Assembly (NCBI RefSeq): GCF_030684315.1
Contig: NC_081361.1
Coordinates: 5,791,150 to 5,855,013, forward strand
Reading direction: 5' to 3'
DNA: 63,864 nt
Source: Stegostoma tigrinum
Lineage: Eukaryota
Shown: in pieces, positions 3,543-61,129 of the stretch
Layout of the letters: each line of letters opens with the position of its first letter
How positions within the stretch are numbered: the first letter of the stretch is position 1
Translations under genes and position numbers: made by a program
The notes under the pieces: generated by a model
The model's input: the letters and a program-made list of their open reading frames with translations, nothing else
What the model was told of the DNA's origin: nothing
The model's database searches: none

Positions 3543-6500
3543 AGATAACAAAGTGTGGAGCTGGATGAACACAGCAGGCCAAGCAGCATCTCAGGAGCAC
3601 AAAAGCTGATGTTTCAGGCCTAGATCCTTCATCAGAGAGGGGGATGGGGAGATGGAACTGGAATAAATAGGGAGAGGGGGAGGTGGACCGAAGATGGAGA
3701 GAAAACAAGATAGGTAGAGAGAAGAGTATAGGTGGGGATGTAGGGAGGGATAGGTCAGTCCAGGGAAGATGGACAGGTCAAGGAGGCGGGATGAGGTGGT
3801 AGGTTTGGAAATGGAGGTGCGGCTTGAGGTGGGAGGAAGGGATTGGTGAGAGGAAGAACAGGTTAGGGAAGCAGAGACAGGCTGGGCTGGCTTTGTGATG
3901 CAGTGGGGGGAGCATAAGAACTGAGCTGGTTTTGGGATGCAGTAGGGGAAGGGGAGATTTTGAAGCTTGTGAAGTCCACGTTGATACCATTGGGCTGCAG
4001 GGTTCCCAAGCGGAATATGAGTTGCTGTTACTGCAACATTCGGATGGCATCATTGTGGCACTGCAGGAGGCCCATGATGGACATGTCGTCTGAGGAATGG
4101 GAGGGGGAGTTGAAATGGTTCACGACTGGGAGGTGCAGTTGTTTGTTGTGAATCGAACGGAGGTGTTCTGCAAAGCGGTCCCCAAGCCTCCGTTTGGTTT
4201 CCCCAATGTAGAGGAAGCCACACCGGGTGCAATGGATACAATATACAACATTGGCAGATGTGCAGGTGAACATCCGTTTGATATGGAAGGTCATCCTGGG
4301 GGCTGGGATGGGGTTGAGGTTGGAGGTGTGGGGGCAAGTGTAGCACTTCCTGCGGTTGCAGGGGAAGGTGCCAGGTGTGGTGGCATTGGAAGGGAGTGAG
4401 GAGCATACAAGGGAGTCATGGAGAGAGTGGTCTCTCCGGAAGGCAGACAAGGGTGGGGATGGAAAAATGGCTTGGGTGGTGGGGTCGGATTGTAGATGGC
4501 GGAAGTTTTGGAGGATGATACGTTATTTCCGGAGGTTGGTGGGGTGGTATGTGAGGACGAGGGGGATCCTCTGGGGGCGGTTGTGGCGGGGCGGGTTGTG
4601 AGGGATGTATTGCGGGAAATGCGGCATTCTCGACCACTGCGGGGTGAAAGTTGCGGTCCTGGAAGAACATGGACATCTGGGATGTGCGGGAGTGGAATGC
4701 CTCATCCTGGGAGCAGATGCGGCGGAGGCGGAGGAATTGGGAATAGGGGATGGAATTTTTGCAGGAGGGTGGTTGGGAGGAGGAGTATTCTAGGTAGCTG
4801 TGGGAGTCAGTGGGCTTGAAATGGACGTCAGTTTCTAGCTGGTTACCTGAGATGGAGACGGAGAGGCCCAGGAAGGTTAGGGATGTGTAGGAGCTGGCCC
4901 AGTTGAACTTGAGGTTGGGGTGGAAGGTGTTGGTAAAGTGGATGAACTGTTTGAGCTCCTCTGGGGAGCAAGAGGCTGCGCTGATACAGTCATCAATGTA
5001 ACGGAGGAAGAGGTGGGGTTTGGGGCCTGTGTAGGTGCGGAAGAGGGACTGTTCCACGTAACCTACAAAGAGGCAGGCATAGCTTGGGCCCATGCGGGTA
5101 CCCATGGCCGCCCCGTTTGTCTGTAGGAAGTGGGAGGAATCGAAAGAGTTGTTGAGGGTGAGGACGAGTTCGACTCGGCGGATGAGGGTGTCGGTGGAGG
5201 GGAATTGGTCAGGCCTGTGGGACAGGAAGAAGCGGTGGGCCTTGAGGCCATCTGCATGAGGAATACAGGTGTATAGGGACTGGACGTCTATGGTGAAAAT
5301 GAGGTGTAGGTTATAGGTTGTAGGTTATGTGGAACAGTCCCTCTTCCGCTCCTACGCAGGCCCCAAATCCCACCTCTTCCTCCGTTACATTGATGACTGT
5401 ATCGGTTCCGGCTCTTGCTCCCCAGAGGAGCTCAAACAGTTCATCCACTTTACCAACACCTTCCACCCCAACCTCAAGTTCACCTGGGCCATCTCCAACA
5501 CATCCCTCACCTTCCTGAACCTCTCATTCTCCATCTCATAACCAGCTATATACTGATGTCCAATTCAAGCCCACTGACTCCCACAGCTACCTAGCATACA
5601 CCTCCTCCTACCCGCTCTCCTGCAAAAATTCCATCCCATATTCCCAATTCCTCCGCCTCCGCCGCATCTGCTCCCAGGATGAGGCATTCCACTCCCGCAC
5701 ATCCCAGATGTCCATGTTCTTCCAGGACCGCAACTTTCACCCCGCAGTGGTCGAGAACGCCGCATTCCCGCAACACATCCCTCACAACCCGCCCCGCCAC
5801 AACCGCTCCCAGAGGATCGCCCTCGTCCTCACATACCACCCCACCAACCTCCGGAAATAACGTATCATCCTCCAAAACTTCCGCCATCTACAATCCGACC
5901 CCACCACCCAAGCCATTTTTCCATCCCCACCCTTGTCTGCCTTCCGGAGAGACCACTCTCTCCATGACTCCCTTGTACGCTCCACACTCCCTTCCAACCC
6001 CACCACACCTGGCACCTCCCCTGCAACCGCAGGAAGTGCTACACTTGCCCCCACACCTCCAACCTCAACCCCATCCCAGCCCCCAGGATGACCTTCCAAA
6101 TCAAACAGCTGTTCACCTGCACATCTGCCAATGTTGTATATTGTATCCATTGCACCCGGTGTGGCTTCCTCTACATTGGGGAAACCAAACGGAGGCTTAA
6201 GGAACGCTTTGCAGAACACCTCGAGCTCAGTTCACAACAAACAACTGCACCTCCCAGTCGCGAACCATTTCCATTCCCCCTCCCATTCCTCAGACGACTT
6301 GTCCATCATGGGCCTCGTGCAGTGCCACAATGATGCCACCCGAATGTTGCAGGAACAGCAACTCATATTCTTCTTGGGAACCCTGCAGCCCAATGGTATC
6401 AACGTGGACTTCACAAGCTTCAAAATCTCCCCTTCCCCTACTGCATCCCAAAACCAGCCCAGTTCTTCCCCTCCCCCCACTGCATCCCAAAACCAGCCCA

Positions 6501-6875
6501 GCCTGTCTCTGCTTCCCTAACCTGTTCTTCCTCTCACCCATCCCTTCCTCCCACCTCAAGCCGCACCTCCATCTCCTACCTACCATCTCATCCCGCCTCC
6601 TTGACCTGTCCATCTTCCCTGGACTGACCTATCCCCTCCCTACCTCCCCACCTATATTCTCCTCTCCACCTATCTTGTTTTCTTTCCATCTTCGGTCTGC
6701 CTCCCCCCTCTCCCTATTTATTCCAGTTCCCTCTCCCCATCCCCCTCTCTAATGAAGGTCTCGGCCCGAAACATCAGCTTTTGTGCTCCTGAGATGCTGC
6801 TTGGCCTGCTGTGTTCATCCAGCTCCACACTTTGTTATCTTGGATTCTCCAGCATCTGCAGTTCCCATTATCACC
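3543..6875. mobile_element. Penelope-like element (Neptune-type), two 5'-truncated arms in inverted orientation (- arm 3543-5307, + arm ~5319-6875)
   Basis: 15-bp TSD AATATTCACGATGCT (3528-3542 / 6876-6890). RT motifs MGTRMGPSYA and FLRYIDD. GIY-YIG VVYCIHC...LYIGETKRRL. Cys-rich linker PCNRRKCYTC. Frameshifts and stops present. Confidence 0.93.
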
Positions 6876-9350: not shown

Positions 9351-12310
9351 GTTACTGCCAGAATGAACAAGGTCACCCTCCCTCACATTACATTCCATCT
9401 GCACGATATTTCTCCAAAGCCCCGCTGTATCTCATATTCAGCAGAATGGAACTTCACTGGGAAAGAGTCGCTTGTAACTGGAATAATGGCACAACTCTGA
9501 GGATCACATCAATAACGGTTTTTATTGAATCTTTCATTAGCTCTGTGTTTAGTGACACAATGCCCTGGTTTGGGCTTTGCTGTCTGTACAAACCACCTGC
9601 AATGTCGTTGCAGCAATGGTTCACATTGGACAGACTGATGGGCAGAGGGGGTGGGTTGGCCCTGTTGTTGATGTATGATATTCAGTCCCTTGCGAGGGGG
9701 GACAAAGAATCAGGAGATGTAGAGTCAGTATGGATAGAGCTGAGAAATTCTAAGGGTAGAAAGACCCTAATGGGAGTTATCTACAGGCCCCCAAATAGTA
9801 GTCAGGATATAGGATGCAAGTTGAATCAAGAGTTGAAATTGGCCTATCACAAAGGTGTCACTACAGTTGTTATGGGAGATTTCAACATGCGAGTAGACTG
9901 GGAGAATCAAGATGGTACTGGACCCCAAGAAAGGAAGTTTGTGGAGTGCCTCCGAGATGGATTCTTAGAACAGCTTGTACTGGAGCCTACCAGGGAGGAG
10001 GCAATTCTGGATCTGGTGTTGTGCAACGAACCGGATTTGATCAGGGACCTCAAAGTAAAGGAGCCATTAGGAGATAGTGACCATAATACGATAAGTTTTA
10101 ATCTGCAGTTTGAGAGGGAGAAGGGAGAATTGGAAGTATCAGTATTGCAGTTGAATAAAGGGAACTATGGAGCTATGAGGGAGGAGCTGGCCAAAGTTCA
10201 ATAGTACAATACCCTAGCAGGGATGACAGTCAAATAACAATGACAGGTATTTCTGGATATAATCCAGAAGGTGCAGGATCAGTTCATTCCAAAGAGGAAG
10301 AAAGACCCTCAGGGGAGGCAGTGGCGGCCGTGACTGACGAGGGAAATTAAGGACTGTATAAAGATAAAAGAGAAGTATAACATATCAAAGATGAGCGGGA
10401 TGCTGGAGGACTGGGAAGATTTTAAAGAGCAACAGTGGATAACTAAAAAGGCAATACACAGAGAAAAAATGAGGTATGAAGGGAAACTGGCCAAAAATAT
10501 AAAGGAGGATAGTAAAAGCTTTTTTAGGTATGTAAAAAGAAAAAAAAAGGTCATGACTAAAATTGGGCCCTTGAAGTCAGAAACGGGTGAATTTATTATG
10601 GGGAACAAGGAAATGGCAGAAGAATTGAATAGGTACTTTGTATCGGTCTTCACTAGGGAAGACCCAAGCAATCTCCCAGATGCAATAGTGGTTGAAGGAC
10701 CTAGGGTAATGGATGAACTGAAGGGAATTTATATTAAGCAGGAAATGGTGTTGGATAGACTGTTAGGTCTAAAGGCAGATAAGTCCCCGGGACCTGATCG
10801 TCTGCATCCCAGGGTACTTAAGGATTAGGCTCTGGAAATTGTGGACGCATTGGTAATCATTTTCCAAGGTTCTATAGATTCAGGATCAGTTCGTGGGGAC
10901 TGGAGGGGGGCTAATGTTGTCCCACTTTTCAAGAAAGGAGGGAGAGAGAAAACAGGAAATGATAGACCTGTTAGCCTGACGTCAGTGGTGGGAAAGATGC
11001 TGCAGTCAATTATAAAAGATGAAATTATGACTCATTTGGATAGCAGTAATAGGATAGGTCAGAGTCAGCATGGATTTACAAAGGGGAAATCGTGCTTGAC
11101 TAATCTTCTGGAATTTTCTGAGGATGTATCTGTGAAGATGGACAAGGGAGAACCAGTGAATGTAATGTACCTGGACTTTCGGAATCCTTTGATAAAGTCC
11201 CACATAGGAGATTGGTGAACAAAATTAGGGCACGTGGTATTGGGGGCAAAAATACTGACTTGGATTGAAAATTGCCTGGCTGACAGGAAGCAAAGAGTAG
11301 TGATAAATGGGTCTCTTTCGGAATGGCAGGCGGTGACCACTGGGGTACCACTAGGTTCAGTACTGGGAGCGCAGCTGTTTACGATATACATTAGTGAAAT
11401 AGACGAAGGCATTAAAAGTAATATTAACAAATTTGCTGCAGACACAAAGCTGGGTGGCAGTGAGTAACGTGAGGAGGATGTTATGAGAATACAGGGTGAC
11501 TTGGACAGCATAGGTGAGTGGATGGATGCATGGCAGATGCAGTTTAATGTGGATAAATGTGTGGTTATCCACTTTGGTGGCAAGAACAGGAAGGCAGATT
11601 TCTATCTCAGTGGAGTCAAGTTAGGTGAAGGGGAAGTACAACGAGATCTAGGTGTTCTTGCTCATCAGTCCATGAAAGCAAACAAGCAGGTACAGCAGGC
11701 AGTGAAGAAAGCTAATGGCATGCTGGCCTTCATAAAAAGAGGAATTGTGTATAGGAGCAAAGAGGTCCTTCTGCAGCTGTACAGAGCCCTGGTGAGACTG
11801 CACCTGGAGTATTGTGTACAGTTTTGGTCTCCAAATTTGAGGAAGGGCATTGTTGCTATTGAGGGAGTGCAGCAGCATAGGTTCACGAGGTTAATTCCTG
11901 GAATGGCAGGACTATCATATGTTGAAAGATTGGAGCGACTGAGCTTGTATACACTTGAGTTTAGAAGGGTGAGAGGGGATCTGATTGAGATATATAAGAT
12001 TATTAAGGGATTGGACACTCTGGAGGCAGGAAGTATGTTCCCGCTGATGGGTGAGTCCAGAACCAGAGGACACAGTTTAAAAATAAGGGGTAGGCCATTT
12101 AGAACAGAGTTGAGGAAAAACTTCTTCACCCAGAGAGTGGTGGATATATGGAATGCTCTGCCCCAGAAGGCAGTGGAGGCCAAGTCTCTGGGTACTTTCA
12201 AGAAAGAGATAGATAGAGCTCTTAAAGACAGTGAAATCAAGGGTTATGGTAATAAGGCAGGAACAAGGTACTGACTGTGGATGATCAGCCATGATCATAA
12301 TGAATGGTGG

Positions 12311-15279: not shown

Positions 15280-17580
15280 AGTGAATTTGACCGGGGAAGG
15301 CAGTAGATGTGGTTTATTTGTACTTTCAGAAGGCTTTTGACAAACTCCACAGAACAGATTAGTGCATGAAATTAGGATTCAAGGGACTGGGGACAATGTA
15401 CTGACAGGGCTTGAAAACAGATTGGCAGACAGGAAACAAAGAGCAGAAATAAATGGGCCTTTTTCTGAAAGGGTGCCGCAGCTATTCACAATATATGTTC
15501 ATGATTCAGATGAGGGAACTTAAGAATAATAGCCCCATGATTGCAGATAACACAAAGCTGGGTGGTGGGTGAGCTGTGAGGACAATGCAGAGATGCTTCA
15601 GTGTGACTTGGACAAGGTGAGTGAGGGGCAGAAGAAGTGCAATATGGATACATGCGAGATTATCCAGTTTAGTTACAAAAACAGGAAGGCAGATTATTAT
15701 CAGAATGGTGATAGATTGGGAATGGGGAGGTGCAATGCGGACATGGGTGTCAACATACAGCAGTCACTGTAAGCATGCAGGTGCAGAAGGTGGTGAAGAA
15801 GGTAAATGGTATGTTGGTCTTCATTCTGAGAGGACTGGATTTTAGGAGCAGGGATGTCTTGCTGCAAATGTACAGGGCTTTCGTGAGATCACACCTGGAG
15901 CATTCAATCCCAAACTGGCTCAGGGACAGGAGACACAGGGTGGGTGCACAAAACTGTTTGAGTGACTGGATCCAGTGTGCCGCAGCATACCCCAGGGATC
16001 AGTGCTGGGTCCCTAATTGTTTGTGATATATACAAACAATGTAGATGAGAATGTGAGAGGTGAGGGGTGAGGTTCTGATAACCAGGCTTATAGATTACAC
16101 AACGATTTGTGGATGGTTGACAGTGAGGAAGAAGGTTTTCAGTTCCAGGAGGGTATAACCGGATCGGTCAGATGGGCAGATCAGATGCGGATGGAATTTA
16201 ATCTTGATAAATGTGAGGTGATGCACTTTTGAAGGTATAACAGGTTTTTAGGATCATTATGAAGGGGAAATGGGACACTTACCTTCACCATTTCAGGTTT
16301 GGACTACAAGAGCAGGGAGGTTATGGTGGAGCTGTACAGAACTTTGGTGAGGCCATAGCTGGAGCACTGCGTGCACCACACTATATGAAGGATGTGGCTG
16401 TAGTGGAGGAGGTGCAGAGGAAATTCACCAGAATGTTGCCTGACATGGAGCATTTCAGATGTAAAGTGAGGCTGGGTAAGGTCAAGTTGATTCGTTTGGA
16501 GCAGGGAAGATGGAGGGGGGTGCTGATCAAGGGGTATATGGTTATGAGGGGAATGGACAGGGTGGATAGAAAGCAGCTGTTCCCCTTCGTCAGAGAGTCA
16601 GTAACAAGTTGGCACACATTCAATGTGGAAGGCAGGAGCTTTAGAGGGGAGTTGAGGAGCAGGGTTTCACCCAGAGGGAGGTTGGGTTTGGAATGCATTG
16701 CCTGGGAGAGTAGTTGAGGTTAGAAACCTCACATCTCTAAAAAAGTTTCAGCAACAGTAGGAACTGCAGATGCTGGAGAATCTGAGACAACAAGGTGTAG
16801 AGCTGAATGAACACAGCAGGCCAAGCAGCATCAGAGGAGCTGGAAAGCTGACGTATCGGGCCCAGACCCTTCTTCAGAAATGGGGGAGGGGAAGGGGATT
16901 TCTGAAACAAATAGGGAGAGAGGGGGAGGGGGATAGAAGATGGATAGAGGAGAAGATGGGGAGTTACCTACACCCACCTTTACTGGCTCCATCCCTGCAT
17001 CTTGGACCTGTCTAAATCCTTTCCACTTATCTTCTCCTCTATCCACCTTCTATCTGCCTCCCCCCTCTCGCTATTTATTTCAGAACCTCATTCCCCTCCC
17101 CCATTTTTGAAGAAGGGTCTAGACCCGAAACGTCAGCTTTTCCTGCTCCTATGATGCTGCTTGGCCAGCTGTGTTCCTCCAGCTCTTCACTTTGTTATCT
17201 CAGCCATCAAAAAGTACTTGGATGAATACTTAAAATGTCATAATATTCAAAGCTATGAGCCTTGTGACAGAAAGTGGGATGAGCGTAGGTTTAGTGCAGT
17301 TTGCCTAGCACAGATGCAATGGGCCGAAGGGCCTCTTCTGTGCTGTGTGATTTTATGATTCTATAGTGTACAGTTTCGGTCTTCTTACCTGAGGAAGGAT
17401 GTTCTGACTGTGGAGGGAGGGCAACGAAGGTTTACCAGACCGATTCCTGGGATGACAGCACTTACATCTGATGGTAAACTGTATCGGTTAGGACTATATT
17501 GGCTGGAGTTTAGAAGATTGAGGAGAATCACATTGACACTGGTAAAATTCTAACAGAAGAAGGCAGGTTAAACACAAGAA
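15280..17580 (+). mobile_element. Mosaic of decayed CR1 RT/3' fragments
   Basis: FQKAFDK, ADNTKLGG, LLQMYRAFVRSHLE and VQRKFTRMLP motifs. Confidence 0.8.
16755..17202. mobile_element. Short inverted two-armed PLE insertion (older subfamily)
   Basis: Left arm GGAACTGCAGATGCTGGAG...; right arm is its reverse complement ending ...TTTGTTATCTCAG. TSD decayed. Confidence 0.8.
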
Positions 17581-21243: not shown

Positions 21244-21278
21244 GCTTACGTTCGGTAAAGGAACCAAGCTCAGACTGA
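21244..21278 (+). CDS. IGKJ: Ig kappa J segment (LTFGKGTKLRL-S)
   Basis: FGxGT motif. Donor GTAAGT 21279-21284, phase 1, matches the C exon (A|GC = Ser). Confidence 0.97.
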
Positions 21279-26789: not shown

Positions 26790-28270
26790 GGAGAAAATTT
26801 TGAAGTTAGAATGAATCTCCATTTCAGGGGTAGTCAGCACGGCTTTGTCAGAGGGAGGCCATGGCCAACAAATCTGGTGAGATTTTGTTGAGGAGGTGAA
26901 TAGGTGTGCAGGTGAGGGTGGCGCAGTTGGTGTAGTTAAATGGATTTCAGGAAGACCTTTGACAAGTTCCCACATGGGAGGTGGATGAAGGAGAGAATGG
27001 CCCATGGGATCCAGGGTAACTTGGCAATTTGGATAGTTTCGGGGGTGGGGCTTAGATTAGTTCACAGGTCGGTGCAACATCGAGGGCCGAAGGGCGTGTT
27101 CTGCGTTGTATTGTCCTATGTTCTATGTTCTAAAACTGACTTTGAGTCAGGTAACAGAGAATGATGGGAGAAGGCTGCGTGTGTGACTGGGCAGTGGGAT
27201 AGCTCAGTGATCAGTGCTGACTCCCTCACTGTGATATACAGGAACAATGTTGATGAGAACAGGTGAGGTGAGGATCAATGAGTTTGTGGATGACATGAAG
27301 ATTGGCTGGAAGGTCGATTGTGAGGAAGAAGGTTTTATGTTCCAGGATATAACCAGATTTGTCAGATGGGCAGGTCAGAGGCAGCTGGAATGTAAGCCTG
27401 ATAAATGTGAGGTGATGCACTTTGGAGGAAGTAACAAGACAAGGGACTACTCAATGAATCAGAGATAATGGGAACTGCAGATGCTGGAGATTCCAAGATA
27501 ATAAAATGGGAGGCTGGATGAACACAGCAGGCCAAGCAGCATCTCAGGAGCACAAAAGCTGACGTTTCGGGCCTAGACCCTTCATGAAGGGTCTAGGCCC
27601 GAAACGTCAGCTTTTGTGCTCCTGAGATGCTGCTTGGCCTGCTGTGTTCATCCAGCCTCCCATTTTATTACTACTCAATGAATGGCAGGAAACTGGGAAT
27701 CTCAGAGGAACAGCAGGATCTTGGGATGTTTGTCCACAGATCCCTGAAAGTGCCAGAGGAAGTCAATCAGGCAGTTATGAAGGCATACTGGACACCTGTC
27801 TTTATCATTTCAGATATAGATTATCTGAAGGTATGGGAAGGATATGGTGGAGTTGTACAGGACATTGGTTAGGCCACAGCTGGGCACTGTGTGCAGTTCT
27901 GGTCACCACACTATAGGAAGGATGTGAATGTACTGGAGGGGGTGCAGCGGAGATTCACCAGGATGTTGCCCACGATGGAGCGTTTCAGTGACGAAGGGGG
28001 ACTAGATAAGCTCACGTTGTTTTCTTTGGAGCAGAGAAGGTTGAGGCTGTTTCACCCAGTGCTGGGGAAGTGGAATACACTGCCTGGGAGGGGAGCAGGT
28101 GGGTAATTTCACAGGCATTCGAATGTACTTGGATGAGCCCCTGAAATATCCCAACATTCAATGTTATGGGCCCAGTTCAAGAAAGGGGGCAGAGAGCAGA
28201 CTTAGTGCAGCATTCATGGTGCAGACTTGATAGGGCGAATGGCCTCTTCAGTACAGTATGATTCTGTGAA
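26790..28270 (+). mobile_element. Decayed CR1 RT/3' region
   Basis: SQHGFVRGR, DFRKTFDK, FVDDMKIG, CEVMHFG and VQRRFTRMLP motifs. Confidence 0.8.
27460..27669. mobile_element. Miniature inverted PLE insertion containing a 172-bp perfect palindrome (27499-27670)
   Basis: 14-bp TSD ACTACTCAATGAAT (27446-27459 / 27670-27683). Arms are exact reverse complements about TTCA|TGAA. Confidence 0.95.
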
Positions 28271-28561
28271 AACTCCCACTGATTAGCACGTACTGCCCGC
28301 CCTTGGATGAAAAATCAGAATCTCCTCCAGGTTGAACAGCACTTGGAGGAAGCACTGAGAGTGGTGAGGGCACAGAATGCACTCTGGGTGGGGAATTTCA
28401 ATGTCCTCCATCAACAAGGAATTTTAATAAACATTAATTCTTTTGTTAGGTTTGTTCAGTATTGGCTGCAAATGTTCAAACAGATTGTTGTGCAACTGAA
28501 TGTTTGGAAAGTTAAAATCTTTTGAATGGTAGGGATTAAAATTGCTTCTGTTGTCTTTCAG

Positions 28562-28890
28562 GCCGTGACAGGTCTCAGCCCAAGCTGACCCTGCTGCCCC
28601 CCTCCCCGGAGCAGGTTCAGACCAAGGGCACTGCCACCCTGGTGTGCCTCGCCAATCACTTCTATCCTGATGAGCTGGTGGTGCAGTGGAAGAAGGATGG
28701 TGCAATCATTTCAGACGGGGTTCAGACCAGCAACTACTTGCTAGCTTCGGACAGCACCTACAGTGTCAGCAGCCTGCTGACCCTCTCTGGCTCTGACTGG
28801 GAGTCCAACGCTCGCTTCTCCTGTGCCCTGACCCACGTCACCCTCCCCTCTCCCCTCAGCAAGACCATCAGGAGATCAGAATGTGTGTAG
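28562..28890 (+). CDS. IGKC: Ig kappa constant exon C1
   Basis: Acceptor TTTCAG. RDRSQPKLTLLPPSPEQVQTKGTATLVCLANHFYPDELVVQWKKDG...YSVSSLLTLSGSDWESNARFSCALTH...RSECV*. Open frame with penultimate Cys. Confidence 0.97.
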
Positions 28891-29176
28891 TGTGTTTGAG
28901 ACAGTCCACAGAGGGGACACAACTTTAAATAGAACAGGGCTGAGCTGGCAGGACAAAGGTCATTGTCAGTACAGAATTTCAACTCTCTTCCTTCTCGCGA
29001 CTGGTTTGGAGACCCTTCTGAGGTTCAGGGGTTAAGACAGGTCATTGGGGCAGTGTAGAGGGTGCTTTACTCTGTTTCTCACCCCATGCTGTCCCTGTCC
29101 TGGAAGTGTTTGATGGAGACAGTGTTGAGGTGTGATGCCAAGTAAAATCTCTCAAAGTTGCTGAAGACTGCCAGCT

Positions 29177-29227
29177 GTACAAAAATCTCTGATGAAGGGT
29201 CTAGGTCCGAAACGTCAGCTTTTGTGC
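29177..29227 (+). ncRNA. Putative minimal type I hammerhead ribozyme (PLE-derived) in the C1 3' UTR
   Basis: CTGATGA-A-[GGGT CTAG GTCC]-GAAA-CGTC core at 29189-29216, palindromic ACGT stem III. Activity untested. Confidence 0.55.
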
Positions 29228-29282
29228 TCCTGAGATGCTGCTTGGACTGCTGTGTTCATCTAGCTTCACACTTTGTTATCTT
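29186..29282 (+). mobile_element. PLE 3'-terminal fragment in the C1 3' UTR
   Basis: Matches the 3' region of the PLEs at 6745-6842 and 59908-60004. Confidence 0.9.
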
Positions 29283-29506
29283 GAACCTCAGAAGTCTGTG
29301 CTTCAGTAAGCCAGAACTCCTTCCTGCTCAGCTGCCAGTTCCAATTTAAAGTTTTGTCACAGCTTAAAATGACACAACTCTAATGTTATTGAGAAAATCT
29401 CCTCAAGTGTTTTCCTCAAGCTCCATTATGGCTGTGAATTTGTGCACTTCCTCTGTCTGGGCTGTTAATTGCAGTCTTTTTTTGTCAATGTCAATCTGGA
29501 AAATGG

Positions 29507-29512
29507 AATAAA
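29507..29512 (+). terminator. Probable polyadenylation signal of C1
   Basis: First AATAAA I found after the stop codon; conserved at the paralogous position of C2; GT-rich downstream. Confidence 0.75.
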
Positions 29513-31295
29513 GATGAAGAAGATTCAGTCTCTGTCTGGTGTAGGGTTTGGAAATGAGCTATCCCTCTCTTAGCTGATTGGCTGGGTGAACTTTCAAACA
29601 ATGACACTTCACTGTAGTCTGGATTGAGAGCCTTTGATCTGGAATCTGTTGAGTTTACAAGATTCCAAACTGATCACAATCTGAAAGCTGCTGGGACTCA
29701 ATCATTGCAATCTGAGATATTAACTCTTCACTGTGTTGGTGAAGACCCACCAGCTGGGATTGCACTGTGCAGTGTCTGCTATCAAACACCTGAAATAAGC
29801 TTTGGCCAATCACAGACTCCGGAGGCTGAAATCGTAACATTACTTTCTTCCACATATGCCTTTTCCTCACAGTGACAGCTCAAAACTGAACTGAGTGAGG
29901 TCTAAGTTCAGAGACAGGATCAGTCAGGATCCCACAGTAAACACGACACCATGTGAGTGTGTCTGTTACGTGCTGCTGTCTGTGGGTGTGTATCTCAGCT
30001 TTACAGCACGTCATCGCTCCTTGAGTCTGATATCAGTGTAAAACCCTGTTGGTGATTTCAGATTTGTTTTGAGGAGGGGAATGGAGGGAGTGTGGTGTGT
30101 CAGAACAAGTTGTGATCATTTCCTGGCCCCCATTCCCATATTACATAAAAAACCTGGAATAACGGGATGTTATGATCGATATGCCTATCACTGAGATTGA
30201 CAGGGCAGAGTTCAGTCACTTACTGTTGATCCAACTTCTGACCAGAATGTGGCCACTTTAACACCAATCGAATAGTTTGAAGTGAAAGGGAATGAATTGG
30301 GGTCTTCCTGTATATTTACACTGGTCTGTCTGACTGCCCCTCATCCTTCCCAGTGTCTGGAGGATAAACCCAATCACCATTTTAAACCAATCAGATTCCC
30401 AAACAACAACAGCTGCCAATGAAAATGACAAGAAGGTGCTGATTATAAAATCTAATCTTTCTTGTTAGACAAGGTACAGACCAACAATCGGTAAGGTGAG
30501 ATTGCATTATGAGGAAGTACTTTATGCAGAGCTGGTGATCACCCTGTGAGACCTCAATGCCACAATTAACAACAAATGCTGTTTGAGATCAGAGTGAGGG
30601 GACAGGAGGGTCACCCAGTGTTTGTCAATGACTCTAAAACAATACACTTTAGGGCAGAACATGAGAGAGACCTCTTCGCTCATTCTCTCTGCAGATTATG
30701 ACTGTTCCCATTCAGCTCCATATGGGTGTGTGCTGTGCTGGTTAATGAGTTAGACTGCAGTGATCCTGCCCTCTGTATACTCATGTCACTGAGAGAGGGA
30801 TATGAGGCTGTGTTTCTGGGATTCATTCATGGGATATGGACATCAGTGTCCGGGCCCAGCATTTATTGCCCACACCCAGTTGTTCCGGAGAAAGAGGGTG
30901 AGCTGCAACTGGGGATGGCGAAACAATGCTGGCCCAGGCAGCAATACCCACATCCCATGCATGGATAGAAGATGCTGATTGTTGGGTATTTAGCTCATTG
31001 TGAACAGACTTTCCACAATCAGGAGGCTGGAGGAGAAGGAAATCTAAAGACATTTCAGAAGCATTTAGCTGAGTTAGTAAAACCCCTCAGCATACAAGGC
31101 TGTGGGCCAAGTCATTGGAAATGGGATTGGAGCATGTTTGACAGTCAGTTTGGACACAATGGGCCTTAGCACCTCTTTCCATACTGTAAAGACTCTGTGA
31201 CCACACAACGCACAACAGGTGACCCAATATGAAGGCTGCACAACAACAAGTGCAGGAGTGGGGTATTCAAAGGCTGATCATCAGCTGAATCCTAC

Positions 31296-54196: not shown

Positions 54197-54409
54197 GAGA
54201 TACTAGAAACTGCAGATGCTGGAGAATCTGAGATAACAAGGTATGGAGCTGGATGATCACAGCAGGCCAAGCAGCATCAGAGGAGCAGGAAGGCTGACTT
54301 TTTAGGCCTAGACTGAAGAAGAAGGGTCTAGGCCCACAACTTCAGCCTTCCTGCTCATCTACTGCTGCTTCGTCTGCTATGTTCATCCAGTTCTACACCT
54401 CCTTATCTC
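54197..54409. mobile_element. Miniature inverted PLE insertion
   Basis: 14-bp TSD AGTGCACAGTGTGA (54183-54196 / 54410-54423). Confidence 0.88.
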
Positions 54410-54726: not shown

Positions 54727-54944
54727 CCCTTTTCCACATTGACATTGACAGAATAAACACTGCAATTAACAGCTCAGACAGAGGAAGCTGCAAAATTCAC
54801 AGCCACAATGGAAAATACTTGTGGAGATTTTCTCAATAACATGAGAGTCCCGTCCCTTCAAACAGTGACAAAACTTTAAATTTGAACTACCGGCTGAGCA
54901 GGAAGGAGGTCTGGTTTGCTGAAGCAGAAACGTCTGAGGTTCAG

Positions 54945-55004
54945 AGGTAACAAGGTGTAGAGCTGGATGAACAAAGCAGGCCAAGAAGCATCAGAGGAGC
55001 AGGA
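54945..55004 (-). mobile_element. PLE 3' fragment in the C2 3' UTR, lacking the hammerhead core
   Basis: TCCTGCTCCTCTGATGC...CCAGCTCTACACCTTGTTA on the - strand. Confidence 0.8.
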
Positions 55005-55300: not shown

Positions 55301-55629
55301 CTACACACATTCTGATCTCCTGATGCTCTTGCTGAGGGGAGAGGAGAGGGTGACGTGGGTGAGAGCACAGGAAAAGCGAGCATTGGACTCCCAGTCAGAG
55401 CCAGAGAGGGTCAGCAGGCTGCTGACACTGTAGGTGCTGTCCGAAGCTCGCAGGTAGTTGCTGGTCTGAATCCCATCAGAAATGATTGCATCATCCTTCT
55501 TCCACTGCACCACCAGCTCATCGGGATAGAAGTGATTGGCAAGGCACACCAGGGTTGCAGTGCCTTTGGTCTGGACCTGCTCTGGGGAAGGGGGCAGCAG
55601 GGTTAGCTTGGGCTGAGACTTGTCACGGC
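55301..55629 (-). CDS. IGKC: Ig kappa constant exon C2 (second cluster)
   Basis: 329 nt, intact acceptor and open frame RDKSQPKLTLLPP...RSECV*. 21 nt and 6 aa differences from C1. Confidence 0.96.
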
Positions 55630-56561: not shown

Positions 56562-58099
56562 CTATCTAACCCTCTGATTATTTTATATGTTTCAATTAAG
56601 TCACCTCTCAACCTTCTTCTCTCTAATGAAAACAGCCTCAAGTCCCTCAGCCTTTTCTTGTAGGACCTTCCCTCCATACCAGGCAACATCCTAGTAAATC
56701 TCCTCTGCACCCTTTCCAAAGCTTCCACAACCTTCTTATAATGCGGTGACCAGAACTATGCGCAATACTCCAAGTGCAGCCTCACCAGAGTTTTGTACAG
56801 CTGCAGCATAATCTCTGGGTTCCTGAACTCGATCCCTCTATTAATAAAAGCTAAAACACTGTATGCCATCTTAACAGCCCTGTCCACCTGGGTGGCAACT
56901 TTCAAGGATCTGTGTACATGGACACCGAGATCTCTCTGCTCATCTACCTTACCAAGAATCTTACCATTAGCCCAGTGCTTTGCCTTCTGGTTACTCCTAC
57001 CAAAATGCATCACCTCACACTTGTCTGCATTAAACTCCATTTGCGATCTCTCAGCCCAGCTCTGCAGCTTATCTATGTCTCTCCGTGACCCACAGCATCC
57101 TTTGTCACTATCCACAACTCCACCAGCCTTAGTGTCGTCTGCAAATTTACGAACCAATCCTTCTACGCCTTTATAAAAATGACAAACAGCAGTGGACCCA
57201 ACACTGACCCTTGCAGTACACCACGAGTATAATAAAATGTGAGGCTGGATGAACACAGCAGGCCAAGCAGCATCTCAGGAGCACAAAAGCTGACGTTTCG
57301 GGCCTAGACCCTTCATCAGAGAGGGGGATGGGGGGAGGGAACTGGAATAAATAGGGAGAGAGGGGGAGGCGGACCGAAGATGGAGAGTAAAGAAGATAGG
57401 TGGAGAGGGTGTAGGTGGGGAGGTAGGGAGGGGATAGGTCAGTCCAGGGAAGACGGACAGGTCAAGGAGGTGGGATGAGGTTAGTAGGTAGCTGGGGGTG
57501 CGGCTTGGGGTGGGAGGAAGGGATGGGAGAGAGGAAGAACCGGTTAGGGAGGCAGAGACAGGTTGGACTGGTTTTGGGATGCAGTGGGTGGGGGGGAAGA
57601 GCTGGGCTGGTTGTGTGGTGCAGTGGGGGGAGGGGATGAACTGGGCTGGTTTAGGGATGCAGTAGGGGAAGGGGAGATTTTGAAACTGGTGAAGTCCACA
57701 TTGATACCATATGGCTGCAGGGTTCCCAGGCGGAATATGAGTTGCTGTTCCTGCAACCTTCGGGTGGCATCATTGTGGCAGTGCAGGAGGCCCATGATGG
57801 ACATGTCATCAAGAGAATGGGAGGGGGAGTGGAAATGGTTCGCGACTGGGAGGTGCAGTTGTTTGTTGCGAACTGAGCGGAGGTGTTCTGCAAAGCGGTC
57901 CCCAAGCCTCCGCTTGGTTTCCCAAATGTAGAGAAAGCCGCACCGGGTACAGTGGATGCAGTATACCACATTGGCAGATGTGCAGGTGAACCTCTGCTTA
58001 ATGTGGAATGTCATCTTGGGGCCTGGGATGGGGGTGAGGGAGGAGGTGTGGGGACAAGTGTAGCATTTCTCCACCTATCTGTACTCCATTTTCTCCCCT

Positions 58100-59686
58100 T
58101 TGGTCCAGGAACTCCCCACCTATGTCCGTGACACCACCCACGCCCTCCACCTCCTCCAGGACTTCCAATTCCCTGGCTCCCAACACCTCATATTCACCAT
58201 GGACGTCCAGTCCCTGTACACCTGCATTCCGCATGGAGATGGCCTCAAGGCCCTCCGCTTCTTCCTGTCCCGCAGGCCCGACCAGGCCCCCTCCACCGAC
58301 ACTCTCATCCGCCTAGCGGAACTCGTCCTCACACTCAACAACTTCTCTTTTGACTCCTCCCACTTCCTACAGACTAAGGGGGTGGCCATGGGCACCCGCA
58401 TGGGCCCCAGCTATGCCTGCCTCTTTGTAGGTTACGTGGAACAGTCCATCTTCCGCACCTACACAGGCCCCAAACCCCACCTCTTCCTCCGGTACATTGA
58501 TGACTGTATCGGCGCCGCCTCTTGCTCCCCAGAGGAGCTCGAACAGTTCATCCACTTCACCAACACCTTCCACCCCAACCTTCAGTTCACCTGGGCCATC
58601 TCCAGCACATCCCTCACCTTCCTGGACCTCTCAGTCTCCATCTCGGGCAACCAGCTTGTAACTGATGTCCATTTCAAGCCCACCGACTCCCACAGCTACC
58701 TAGAATACACCTCCTCCCACCCACCCTCCTGCAAAAATTCCATCCCCTATTCCCAATTCCTCCGCCTCCGCCGCATCTGCTCCCACGATAAGACATTCCA
58801 CTCCCGCACATCCCAGATGTCCAAGTTCTTTAAGGACCGCAACTTCCCCCCCACGGTGATTGAGAACGCCCTTGACCGCGTCTCCCGCATTTCCCGCGTC
58901 ACATCCCTCACACCCCGCCCCCGCCACAACCGCCCCAAGAGGATCCCCCTCGTTCTCACACACCACCCTACCAACCTCCGGATACAACGCATTATCCTCC
59001 GACACTTCCGCCATTTACAATCCGACCCCACCACCCAAGACATTTTTCCATCCCCACCCCTGTCTGCTTTCCGGAGAGACCACTCTCTCCGTGACTCCCT
59101 TGTTCGCTCCACACTGCCCTCCAACCCCACCACACCCGGCACCTTCCCCTGCAACCGCAGGAAATGCTACACTTGTCCCCACACCTCCTCCCTCACCCCC
59201 ATCCCAGGCCCCAAGATGACATTCCACATTAAGCAGAGGTTCACCTGCACATCTGCCAATGTGGTATACTGCATCCACTGTACCCGGTGCGGCTTTCTCT
59301 ACATTGGGGAAACCAAGCGGAGGCTTGGGGACCGCTTTGCAGAACACCTCCGCTCAGTTCGCAACAAACAACTGCACCTCCCAGTCGCGAACCATTTCCA
59401 CTCCCCCTCCCATTCTCTTGATGACATGTCCATCATGGGCCTCCTGCACTGCCACAATGATGCCACCCGAAGGTTGCAGGAACAGCAACTCATATTCCGC
59501 CTGGGAACCCTGCAGTCATATGGTATCAATGTGGACTTCACCAGTTTCAAAATCTCCCCTTCCCCTACTGCATCCCTAAACCAGCCCAGTTCATCCCCTC
59601 CCCCCACTGCACCACACAACCAGCCCAGCTCTTCCCCCCCACCCACTGCATCCCAAAACCAGTCCAACCTGTCTCTGCCTCCCTAA
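58100..59686 (+). CDS. 5'-truncated but uninterrupted PLE RT + GIY-YIG endonuclease ORF (528 aa)
   Basis: MDVQSLYT, GVAMGTRMGPSYA, RYIDD, FLDL, KPTD; CNRRKCYTC linker; VVYCIHC...YIGETKRRL...H...HF. Confidence 0.9.
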   Translation: MVQELPTYVRDTTHALHLLQDFQFPGSQHLIFTMDVQSLYTCIPHGDGLKALRFFLSRRPDQAPSTDTLIRLAELVLTLNNFSFDSSHFLQTKGVAMGTRMGPSYACLFVGYVEQSIFRTYTGPKPHLFLRYIDDCIGAASCSPEELEQFIHFTNTFHPNLQFTWAISSTSLTFLDLSVSISGNQLVTDVHFKPTDSHSYLEYTSSHPPSCKNSIPYSQFLRLRRICSHDKTFHSRTSQMSKFFKDRNFPPTVIENALDRVSRISRVTSLTPRPRHNRPKRIPLVLTHHPTNLRIQRIILRHFRHLQSDPTTQDIFPSPPLSAFRRDHSLRDSLVRSTLPSNPTTPGTFPCNRRKCYTCPHTSSLTPIPGPKMTFHIKQRFTCTSANVVYCIHCTRCGFLYIGETKRRLGDRFAEHLRSVRNKQLHLPVANHFHSPSHSLDDMSIMGLLHCHNDATRRLQEQQLIFRLGTLQSYGINVDFTSFKISPSPTASLNQPSSSPPPTAPHNQPSSSPPPTASQNQSNLSLPP

Positions 59687-59910
59687 CCGGTTCTTCCTCT
59701 CTCCCATCCCTTCCTCCCACCCCAAGCCGCACCCCCAGCTACCTACTAACCTCATCCCACCTCCTTGACCTGTCCGTCTTCCCTGGACTGACCTATCCCC
59801 TCCCTACCTCCCCACCTACACCCTCTCCACCTATCTTCTTTACTCTCCATCTTCGGTCCGCCTCCCCCTCTCTCCCTATTTATTCCAGTTCCCTCCCCCC
59901 ATCCCCCTCT

Positions 59911-59938
59911 CTGATGAAGGGTCTAGGCCCGAAACGTC
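59911..59938 (+). ncRNA. PLE minimal hammerhead motif (mirror copy 57292-57319 on -)
   Basis: CTGATGA-A-GGGT CTAG GCCC-GAAA-CGTC. Confidence 0.65.
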
Positions 59939-61129
59939 AGCTTTTGTGCTCCTGAGATGCTGCTTGGCCTGCTGTGTTCATCCAGCCTCACATTTTATTA
60001 TCTTGGAATCTCCAGCATCTGCAGTTCCCATTATCTCAGTACACCACGAGTAACTGGTCTCCAGGATGAACATTTCCCATCAATTACCACCCTTTGTCTT
60101 CTTTCAGCAAGCCAATTTCCAATCCAAACTGCTATATCTCCACAATTCCATTCCTCTGCATTTTGTACAATAGCCTACTGTGGGGAACCTTATCGAACGC
60201 CTTGCTGAAAATCACATACACACATCACCCGGTTTACTCTCATCTCCCTGTTTGGTCACCTTCTCAAAGAACTCAATAAGGTTTGTGAGGCACGACTTCT
60301 CCTTCACAAAACTGTGCTGACTATCCTGAAGCAATTTATTCTTTGCGAGATGATTATAAATCCTATCCCTGAAAGCCTTTTCCAACACTTTATCAACAAC
60401 TGAGGTAAGGCTCACTGGTCTATAATTACCAGGGTTGTCTCTACTCCCCTTCTTGAACAGGGGAAACACATTTGCTATCCTCCAGTCATCTGGCACTATT
60501 CCTGTGGACAATGACGAGTTAACGATCAATGCCAAAGGCTCGGCTATCTCCTCCCTGGCTTTCCAGAGGATCCTACGATAAATCCCATCTGGCCCAGGGG
60601 ACTTTTCTATCTTCACCCTCTGTAGGATTTCTAATGCCTGTTCCTTGTGAACCTCAATCCCACCTAGTCTAGTAGCCTGTATCTCAGTATTCTCCTCAAT
60701 AACATTGTCATTTTCTAGAGTGAATACTGTTGAAAAATATTCATTTAGTGAAATGTATTCAGGGTTCCAGTGGGATGGATCTTTGACGATGTTGGCAGCT
60801 TTTCTGTGGCAGCAAGTTGTGTAAATTGAGTCTATGGATGGCTTCTGTGATGGACTGGGTTGTGCACACAACCTTCAGTAGTTTCTTATTGGCCTGTGCA
60901 GAGAAGCTGTCAATATGTGCCAAGACAGTTTGCTTTCAATCGTGCATATGTAGAAGCTAGTGAGGAGCCTTACAGACATGCCAAATCTCCTGAGCCACCT
61001 GAGGAAGAAGACGTGTTGTTGTGCCTTCTTCTCTGTTGCATCTGTATGGGAAGTCTAGGGCAGGTCGTCGGTTAACGTCATGACATTTTCATGACGGCGA
61101 TCAGAACTCAGTGTGATCGACAGTAGAGA

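What the first reader, a model, noticed from the sequence alone, without database searches (positions are those of the whole stretch)
29177..29227. Hammerhead ribozyme motif in sense orientation inside an immunoglobulin light-chain 3' UTR
Seen: between the C1 stop (28890) and AATAAA (29507) is a full core, CUGAUGA-A-[GGGU/GUCC stem II]-GAAA-CGUC, with predicted cleavage after C29216. In the parent PLE (59911) stem I has only 2 bp in cis. Here the upstream flank GUACAAAA(AU)CU can pair with the downstream AG(C)UUUUGUGC, adding 8 bp beyond a small internal loop. The C2 paralog has no core. Established: PLEs carry minimal hammerheads with palindromic stem III that cleave mainly as dimers, and 3' UTR hammerheads in rodent Clec2 genes reduce expression. 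Inference: very abundant light-chain mRNA in plasma cells could dimerise and self-cleave, removing the poly(A) tail. That would be a concentration-dependent, cluster-specific brake on Ig expression. It may equally be inert.
Basis: partly seen in the sequence, partly recalled or inferred. Interest (0 to 1): 0.8.

Follow-up and report, generated by a model that had tools for sequence, protein, structure and literature searches.

The report
Penelope hammerhead relic in antibody UTR
The hammerhead-ribozyme motif is real and sits in the expressed 3' UTR of a shark antibody light-chain gene, but it is the broken-off tail of a very common jumping gene (a Penelope-like element), and nothing found here suggests that it cuts the mRNA.

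Summary
A complete minimal hammerhead (HHR) core lies at 29189-29216 (+), between the C1 stop (28888-28890) and AATAAA (29507).

- **Origin.** It belongs to a 5'-truncated, about 96-nt 3' end of a Penelope-like element (PLE). This PLE 3' end occurs 16 times in the 64-kb window. It includes a full RT + GIY-YIG copy with the same HHR at 59911.
- **Expression.** RNA contigs from the same species show C1 spliced to J. They match the window exactly across the predicted cut site. They place the poly(A) site at 29527, so uncut message accumulates.
- **Paralogs.** C2 carries a different PLE subfamily at the same point without the core. A third expressed variant lacks the whole insert.
- **Extra stem I pairing.** It is no better than 4.6% of random genomic flanks. 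In folding models it clamps an inactive hairpin in which CUGAUG pairs with CGUCAG. The double-hammerhead dimer is far less stable than the competing folds.
- **Published activity.** Single PLE min-HHRs showed no detectable cleavage in vitro.

Verdict: a passenger repeat, a new member of a known kind, and low interest. Cleavage itself remains untested. The scan already holds 181 hammerhead notes for this genome.

The parts
21244..21278 (+). J segment of cluster 1, spliced to the C1 exon
   Evidence: The J motif FGKGTKLRLS was found and the sequence read, with a GTAAGT donor after 21278. RNA contigs carry J letters directly before 28562 (loose ends in X19, X20 and X22).
28562..28890 (+). Ig light-chain constant exon C1, including the stop TAG at 28888-28890
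   Evidence: Translation. Pfam C1-set 77.8 bits. RNA depth begins at 28562 and is zero in the intron 28074-28517 apart from one small peak.
28891..29527 (+). Unspliced 3' UTR of C1
   Evidence: Overlapping contigs with 0-1 differences from the window cover 28885-29093, 28929-29235, 29226-29476 and 29459-29527. In X19 the contig ending at 29527 runs on into A8 plus adapter.
29186..29281 (+). 5'-truncated 3' end of a 'young' (Y) subfamily Penelope-like element, ending at TTATCT
   Evidence: blastn gives 93.9% identity to 59908-60005. The alignment of 16 copies is. The X22 contig that skips 29183-29281 marks the same right-hand edge.
29189..29216 (+). Minimal hammerhead core, C3 to C17, with predicted cleavage after C29216
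   Evidence: Read. One mismatch (T29206) to the 59911 copy.
29197..29208 (+). Helix II (GGGT/GTCC, 4 bp including two wobble pairs) with the palindromic loop CTAG. T29206 replaces the family's C.
   Evidence: Predicted pairing probability 0.04-0.59.
29212..29215 (+). ACGT palindrome (15.1-16.1). It cannot form a helix III hairpin within one molecule.
   Evidence: This feature of PLE min-HHRs is described in PMC4209133.
29177..29184 (+). Upstream UTR flank that pairs with 29220-29227 (the outer 8 bp of 'stem I')
   Evidence: pair probability 0.75-1.0. Its counterpart is also present in C2, which has no core. 4.6% of random flanks pair as well.
29220..29227 (+). PLE tail segment TTTTGTGC, the 3' strand of the outer helix
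29507..29512 (+). AATAAA poly(A) signal. The poly(A) site is at 29527.
   Evidence: (loose end behind 29527).
55304..55627 (-). Paralogous constant exon C2
   Evidence: tblastn, 94.4% identity.
54936..55004 (-). PLE fragment in the C2 3' UTR. It is of the 'old' (O) subfamily, starts at TCCTGCTCC and has no hammerhead core.
57229..60035 (+). PLE with an inverted 5' arm. It has intact hammerhead motifs at 57292-57319 (-) and 59911-59938 (+). ORF 58100-59686 encodes RT followed by GIY-YIG.
   Evidence: Pfam RVT_1 24.9 bits and GIY-YIG 19.2 bits, both under the curated cut-offs but in the PLE order.

Best explanation
The motif is a passenger. It is the last ~96 nt (hammerhead plus 'tail') of a 5'-truncated Penelope-like retrotransposon copy that became part of the 3' UTR of one light-chain cluster (C1). 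It is transcribed and kept in the mature, polyadenylated mRNA.

Its catalytic core is intact by sequence. As a single copy it has no helix III. The RNA is predicted to settle into a hairpin in which CUGAUG pairs with CGUCAG, closed by the fortuitous 8-bp outer helix. It therefore most likely does not cleave the message to any meaningful extent and has no regulatory role.

Shown here: identity, origin, transcription, the poly(A) site and lack of conservation among paralogs. Inferred: catalytic inactivity in vivo.
For: - **Repeat origin.** There are 8 near-identical 31-mers and 16 tail copies in 64 kb. A full RT + GIY-YIG element carries the same motif.
- **Not conserved.** C2 has an O-subfamily fragment without the core at the same point. 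An expressed variant skips 29183-29281 altogether.
- **mRNA is intact across the site.** Contigs with 0 differences from the window cover 28929-29235 in X20 and X21 and 29125-29234 in X22. They link unique UTR sequence and the C1-specific T29206 to letters beyond 29217. The poly(A) site is at 29527. Contig depth upstream against downstream is 1246 vs 1028 in X21 and 10 vs 13.3 in X20.
- **Folding.** The MFE is -18.1 kcal/mol, with the alternative CUGAUG:CGUCAG helix at probability 0.98-1.0. The hammerhead-type structure scores -6.2, and its inner helix I pairs have probability <=0.004. The double hammerhead scores -10.7, against -48.6 for the extended duplex.
- **No sign of selected structure.** The hairpin has z = -1.4, and 22 of 200 shuffles fold as well. 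The stem I extension is matched by 4.6% of random flanks.
- **Literature.** A single PLE min-HHR showed no detectable cleavage, and dimers or trimers showed low activity (PMC4209133). No RNA-seq reads start or end at the HHR site of an Anolis PLE (PMC11167929). In Xenopus, the few exonic HHR-bearing PLE derivatives lie mostly in 3' UTRs (bioRxiv 10.64898/2026.07.22.740005).
Against: - The core carries no disabling change and keeps both CpGs, while most other copies in the window have lost core positions. The sample is too small to show selection.
- Only contigs, not raw reads, were available, so RNA ends at 29216/29217 could not be looked for.
- In two runs of one study, depth downstream of the motif is lower (X22: 160 vs 61-76; X19 bins about 436,000 vs 45,000-176,000). 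The tool warns that contig depth cannot rank parts of a gene.
- Nearest-neighbour folding ignores hammerhead tertiary contacts and co-transcriptional folding.
- The 66-nt model predicts that dimers (of the inactive kind) are thermodynamically possible.
Confidence: 0.78

Rival explanations
1. At the very high light-chain mRNA levels of plasma cells, two C1 UTRs pair through the ACGU palindrome, with strand-swapped helix I, into a double hammerhead. They cut after C29216 and lose the poly(A) tail. This would be a concentration-dependent, cluster-specific brake.
For: - The core is intact, with the four hallmarks of PLE min-HHRs.
- It lies between the stop codon and the poly(A) site of a highly expressed mRNA.
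- The 10 possible helix I pairs could equally form between two molecules.
- The 66-nt model gives a dimer ensemble of -49.4 against 2 x -19.2 kcal/mol, so association is not excluded.
- Depth is lower downstream of the motif in X19 and X22 (weak evidence).
Against: - The stable predicted dimer is a fully paired duplex, not the double hammerhead (-48.6 vs -10.7).
- The cis hairpin competes with the dimer.
- Published dimeric PLE HHRs need two copies in one RNA and still cleave poorly (PMC6765202).
- The mature mRNA holds only one copy.
- The nearest sense copy in the pre-mRNA (27581) has a mutated CUGAUGA box.
- The core is absent from C2 and from a third expressed variant.
- Uncut message is abundant.
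Confidence: 0.06
2. The insert acts without cleavage. The hairpin with its palindromic CUAG loop would serve as a structural element of the UTR, for example as a protein-binding or mRNA-stability site, or as a dimerisation site.
For: The outer helix has predicted probability 0.75-1.0 even in the context of the whole UTR. Helix II is near-palindromic and extends into a 12-bp intermolecular duplex in cofold.
Against: The hairpin is no more stable than shuffled sequence (z -1.4). The element is missing from the paralogs. The same hairpin is a property of every copy of this abundant repeat.
Confidence: 0.08
3. The UTR works in trans. Its 5' flank, core and ACGU would bind Y-subfamily PLE transcripts (helix I 10 bp, helix III 4 bp) and cut them, as a host-encoded anti-transposon ribozyme.
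For: This rests on geometry only. In a double hammerhead the core of one strand cuts the C17 of the other. Y-type PLE RNAs carry the matching 3' arm AGCTTTTGTGC.
Against: The UTR's own 3' strand occupies the arm in cis. The flank predates the core, because C2 has it too, and it is within chance. There are no supporting data.
Confidence: 0.02

Closest known systems
Minimal hammerheads (min-HHR) of metazoan Penelope-like elements (Cervera & de la Pena 2014, PMC4209133; Lunse et al. 2016/17, cited in PMC6765202)
   Same: - The CUGAUGA / GAAA / C17 core.
- An unpaired nucleotide between A9 and G10.1.
- A G10.1-C11.1 pair.
- A palindromic 15.2-16.2 with no helix III hairpin.
- A very short helix I in the parent element.
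- A position in the non-coding end of an RT + GIY-YIG element.
- Thousands of dispersed, truncated single copies per genome.
   Different: This copy has been captured in the 3' UTR of an immunoglobulin gene. Its helix II is weakened (C to T at 29206). A host-derived flank lengthens helix I.
Discontinuous hammerhead in the 3' UTR of rodent and platypus Clec2 genes (Martick et al. 2008, as reviewed in PMC6155905 and PMC6765202)
   Same: A hammerhead core in sense orientation between the stop codon and the poly(A) signal of an immune-system gene. Cleavage would separate the ORF from the poly(A) tail.
   Different: The Clec2 motif is a type III hammerhead with stable helices. It cleaves as a single molecule and is conserved across species. 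The shark motif is a type I min-HHR without helix III, is not shared by its paralogs, and has a recent repeat origin.
Monomeric non-LTR retrozyme / PLE pLTR derivatives in Xenopus genes (bioRxiv 10.64898/2026.07.22.740005)
   Same: HHR-bearing PLE derivatives are rare in exons (0.24-0.32%). When they are exonic, they lie mostly in the 3' UTR of the last exon. That is the situation here.
   Different: A different lineage and element family, and no Ig gene was reported there.
Double hammerheads of newt satellite 2 and ASBVd (Forster et al. 1988, as cited in PMC6155905)
   Same: Helix III is too short for monomer activity, and a palindromic loop lets two copies build an extended helix III.
   Different: Those act between tandem copies on one transcript. 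The C1 mRNA carries a single copy.

Membership tests
PLE minimal hammerhead (min-HHR) | Conserved core boxes CUGANGA ... GAAA ... H17 in type I order | tested here: met
   29189-29195, 29209-29212 and C29216.
PLE minimal hammerhead (min-HHR) | [quoted passage not shown] | tested here: met
   A29196. The criterion comes from PMC4209133.
PLE minimal hammerhead (min-HHR) | G10.1-C11.1 pair closing helix II | tested here: met
   G29197-C29208.
PLE minimal hammerhead (min-HHR) | Palindromic 15.2-16.2 with no helix III hairpin | tested here: met
   ACGT at 29212-29215.
PLE minimal hammerhead (min-HHR) | Derivation from an element encoding RT + GIY-YIG | tested here: met
   93.9% identity to the 3' end of the element at 57229-60035. 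That element's ORF has RVT_1 followed by GIY-YIG matches, each below Pfam's cut-off.
PLE minimal hammerhead (min-HHR) | Self-cleavage at C17, as a dimer | not testable with these tools
   Only contigs were available, so RNA ends cannot be seen.
Rfam hammerhead families (types I, II, III, HH9, HH10) | Score at or above the family's gathering threshold | tested here: not met
   No hammerhead match in the window at gathering score, nor at E<=10 in 29100-29300. I put this down to the missing helix III hairpin.
Regulatory 3' UTR hammerhead (Clec2 type) | Located between the stop codon and the used poly(A) site of an expressed mRNA | tested here: met
   Stop at 28890, motif at 29189-29216, poly(A) site at 29527.
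Regulatory 3' UTR hammerhead (Clec2 type) | All three helices can form within one transcript | tested here: not met
   No helix III is possible (A-U closing a 2-nt loop). The hammerhead-type fold scores -6.2 against an MFE of -18.1 kcal/mol.
Regulatory 3' UTR hammerhead (Clec2 type) | Conserved among paralogs and orthologs | tested here: not met
   Absent from C2 and from a third expressed variant.
Regulatory 3' UTR hammerhead (Clec2 type) | Cleavage lowers expression | not testable with these tools
   This needs reporter or RNA-end assays.

The most novel reading that the evidence does not exclude
The C1 light-chain mRNA does self-cleave at C29216 at a low but real rate. Cleavage would run through transient co-transcriptional or intermolecular double-hammerhead folding in plasma cells, where this message is extremely abundant. 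One Ig cluster would then carry a ribozyme-based, dose-dependent limit on its own output that its paralogs lack.
Probability: 0.05. Interest if true: 0.7.

Novelty: new member of a known kind. Interest (0 to 1): 0.2.

Why it matters
If the motif were active, it would be the second natural case, after Clec2, of a hammerhead that separates an immune-gene ORF from its poly(A) tail, and the first in an antibody gene.

As things stand it is mainly a caution. In genomes full of Penelope-like elements, intact-looking hammerhead cores turn up in UTRs and introns by insertion alone. Sequence integrity of the core is not evidence of function.

The locus is still a convenient natural test case. It offers a very highly expressed mRNA with a single min-HHR and paralogs without it. 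That could be used to ask whether PLE min-HHRs ever cleave in vivo.

Tried and rejected
- **Rfam.** The scan at gathering score and at E<=10 found no hammerhead hit. This is uninformative for a motif without helix III.
- **Is the upstream flank an inverted PLE tail (twin-priming style)?** That would explain stem I mechanistically. The best local alignment, 12 of 14 matches in C2, is reached by 199 of 2000 shuffles, and the C1 alignment by 942 of 2000. I rejected it as unsupported.
- **Paralog and ortholog survey.** The C-exon protein search gave 4 hits.
- **Isotype from solved structures.** Uninformative, because multi-domain Ig chains dominate the hits. I did not test 'kappa'.
- **Cluster 2 V/J.** No similarity to the V1/J1 region was found elsewhere in the window. 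That the PLE at 57229-60035 lies in the C2 J-C intron is therefore only an inference.
- **Contig depth as a cleavage readout.** It is flat in one study and falls in the other. I judged it unusable.
- **Spliced model.** Only the C exon was searched.

Full report
**Observation**

- CTGATGA at 29189-29195, then an extra A at 29196.
- Helix II: GGGT / loop CTAG / GTCC at 29197-29208. It has four pairs, two of them wobble.
- GAAA at 29209-29212, CG, T29215 and C29216.

The C1 stop codon is TAG at 28888-28890 and AATAAA is at 29507-29512. The copy at 59911 differs only by having C where C1 has T29206. The motif is not a chance match. The 31-mer, allowing up to 3 mismatches, occurs 8 times in the window against 0 expected. 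No Rfam hammerhead model matches, either at gathering score or at E<=10. I attribute this to the missing helix III hairpin.

**What it belongs to**

blastn with 59880-60040 finds 16 copies of this sequence in 64 kb. Two of them end large elements, at 3545-6872 and 57229-60035. These two elements share their interior at about 90% identity.

The element at 57229-60035 has a 528-aa ORF (58100-59686) with a YIDD reverse-transcriptase segment followed by a GIY-YIG nuclease segment. Pfam gives RVT_1 24.9 bits and GIY-YIG 19.2 bits. Both are under the curated cut-offs, but they stand in the order that defines Penelope-like elements. The element also has an inverted 5' arm carrying a second, perfect hammerhead motif at 57292-57319 (-).

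The UTR motif shows all four hallmarks that Cervera and de la Pena list for metazoan PLE minimal hammerheads (PMC4209133):
- the core boxes;
- a G10.1-C11.1 pair;
- a palindromic 15.2-16.2.

The alignment of all copies separates two subfamilies:
- A young one (Y), with tail TTTTGTGCTCCTGAGATG and core CTGATGA.
- An older one (O), with tail TTTCCTGCTCCTCTGATG and core CTGAAGA.

The C1 fragment (29186-29281) is of Y type, 93.9% identical to the 59880 copy. It ends at TTATCT, a short 3' end that several other copies also use. This fits the internal initiation of reverse transcription described for PLEs (PMC11167929).

**Gene context and expression**

The exon 28562-28890 encodes an Ig C1-set domain. 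A V segment lies near 20.4 kb, and a J segment lies at 21244-21278 with a GTAAGT donor.

Four runs of one coded organism were laid on 28000-30200:
- **The runs hold RNA.** There is almost no depth in the intron. Depth starts at 28562, and contigs carry J letters directly before 28562. C1 is therefore spliced to J.
- **The UTR is covered by window-identical contigs.** Contigs with 0-1 differences from the window cover 28885-29093 (X22), 28929-29235 (X20, X21), 29125-29234 (X22), 29226-29476 (X21) and 29459-29527 (X19).
- **The poly(A) site is at 29527.** The X19 contig runs on into A8 plus a Nextera adapter there, 15 nt after AATAAA.
- **Uncut RNA exists.** The contigs that end at 29234-29235 join unique UTR sequence, including the C1-specific T29206, to letters beyond 29217. 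They have 18-19 letters beyond the cut site, fewer than the 31 the tool asks for a formal bridge. The contigs stop there because the following words are shared with other PLE copies.

Contig depth on the two sides of the motif is similar in X21 (1246 vs 1028) and X20 (10 vs 13.3). It is lower downstream in X22 (160 vs 61-76) and in X19. The tool warns that contig depth cannot rank parts of a gene, so I draw nothing from it.

**Paralogs**

C2 (55627-55304, minus strand, 94% amino-acid identity) has a UTR that aligns with C1 at about 90% through to the AATAAA. At the same position it holds an O-type fragment that starts at TCCTGCTCC, so it lacks the 34 nt that contain the core. All five sites that distinguish Y from O in the shared tail differ accordingly.

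A third expressed variant (X22, depth 46.5, 30-nt sides) joins 29182 to 29282 with 8 other letters in between. It looks like an empty site. The C1 and C2 left flanks can be read as diverged copies of those 8 letters, which would put both fragments at the same TC|TG point.

Three histories fit these facts:
- Two independent insertions.
- A Y-type insertion that overwrote an O-type fragment. PLEs are said to insert into or beside older copies (PMC6765202).
- One insertion, followed by conversion in one cluster and a 36-nt deletion between TC repeats in C2.

I cannot choose between them. In every one of them the core is not a conserved feature of these UTRs.

**Stem I**

The flank G(T/C)ACAAAAA exists in C2 as well, which has no core. 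I tested whether it is an inverted PLE-tail fragment, and the alignment is not better than shuffled sequence. Its duplex with the tail (-8.1 kcal/mol) is matched or beaten by 4.6% of random genomic flanks. The extension is real but unremarkable.

**Folding**

As a monomer the motif cannot form helix III, because an A-U pair would have to close a 2-nt loop. The predicted fold of 29170-29235, and of the whole UTR, keeps the outer 8-bp helix (pair probability 0.75-1.0). Inside that helix, CUGAUG pairs with CGUCAG, which buries C3-G8 and C17. The figures are:
- MFE -18.1 against -6.2 kcal/mol for the hammerhead-type structure.
- Inner helix I pairs at probability <=0.004.
- The alternative helix at probability 0.98-1.0 in C1 against 0.36-0.58 in the parent copy.

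So the extra pairing clamps the inactive form. The hairpin is no more stable than shuffled sequence (z -1.4).

By strand connectivity (my inference), each active site of a double hammerhead uses the core and 5' arm of one molecule and the C17 and 3' arm of the other. For two UTR molecules that structure scores -10.7 kcal/mol. Two hairpins score -36.2 and a fully paired extended duplex scores -48.6. These models ignore tertiary contacts and co-transcriptional folding, so they weigh against activity but do not exclude it.

The only other sense copy in the C1 pre-mRNA, at 27581 in the J-C intron, has a mutated box, TTCATGA. It could not supply the core needed to cut the UTR.

**Literature prior**

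- A single S. mansoni PLE min-HHR gave no detectable cleavage, and dimers and trimers gave low activity (PMC4209133).
- Rates are very low even for dimers (PMC6765202).
- For an Anolis PLE, no RNA-seq reads begin or end at the hammerhead site (PMC11167929).
- In Xenopus, HHR-bearing PLE derivatives are rare in exons, and when exonic they lie mostly in 3' UTRs (bioRxiv 10.64898/2026.07.22.740005).
- The Clec2 3' UTR hammerhead is a different, monomer-competent type III motif that is conserved across species (PMC6155905; PMC6765202).

**Verdict**

The regulatory hypothesis is unsupported. The most likely reading (about 0.78) is an inert PLE relic carried in an abundant mRNA. It is a new member of a known kind, and its interest is low.

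**Limits**
- Only contigs were available, so RNA ends were not visible.
- The name 'zebra shark' comes from another agent's note and was not checked.
- The scan already holds 181 notes that mention hammerheads in this genome. The eight shown all concern Tx1 LINEs inserted in PLE hammerheads.

Noticed in passing
window 29186-29281 (+) and 54936-55004 (-): The paralogous C1 and C2 3' UTRs hold fragments of two different PLE subfamilies (Y and O) at what looks like the same TC|TG point. All five Y/O diagnostic sites differ. The flanks are about 90% identical. An expressed contig (X22, joint 29182->29282) looks like the empty site. The cause could be a hot spot, an overwrite of an older PLE tail, or conversion plus a 36-nt deletion.
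   Followed up: partly
window 27462-27670: Two Y-type PLE tails are joined head to head in a perfect palindrome. Its centre (TTCATGAA) lies inside the hammerhead box and destroys the CUGAUGA core of both arms. A similar head-to-head junction lies at 54197-54390.
   Followed up: no
Read laying, X20 loose end before 29216: One RNA contig from another PLE locus starts its direct arm exactly at the nucleotide after the predicted cleavage site (AGCTTTTG...), joined to an inverted tail. That is what reverse transcription of an HHR-cleaved PLE RNA followed by a template switch would leave. It is a single case.
   Followed up: no
window 57229-60035 and 3545-6872: Two PLE copies, about 90% identical to each other, each have an inverted 5' arm that repeats the GIY-YIG end and the hammerhead. 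The element at 57229-60035 probably lies in the J-C intron of cluster 2, with a perfect hammerhead in the sense orientation of that gene. This is an inference, because no V2/J2 was found in the window.
   Followed up: partly
PLE tail, e.g. 59995-60035: PLE copies end at one of two places about 30 nt apart. Both follow a TTATCT(C) motif (...TTTATTATCT and ...CCCATTATCTC). This agrees with internal initiation of reverse transcription at a repeated short motif.
   Followed up: no
proteins P0001 and P0002: The two closest database relatives of the shark C exon (78-82% identity) are filed as Aeromonas veronii and Salmonella enterica proteins. These are most likely fish or shark contamination in bacterial assemblies.
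   Followed up: no
Read laying, loose end behind 29122 in all four runs: Contigs match C1 up to 29122 and then continue with unrelated sequence (GGTCAGGGTTGAAG...). This suggests a further expressed paralog with a different distal UTR.
   Followed up: no
window 11532-11613, 15627-15708, 56756-57256 and others: Several LINE reverse-transcriptase fragments (family D13; a 166-aa ORF at 56756-57256) are interspersed with the PLE copies.
   Followed up: no
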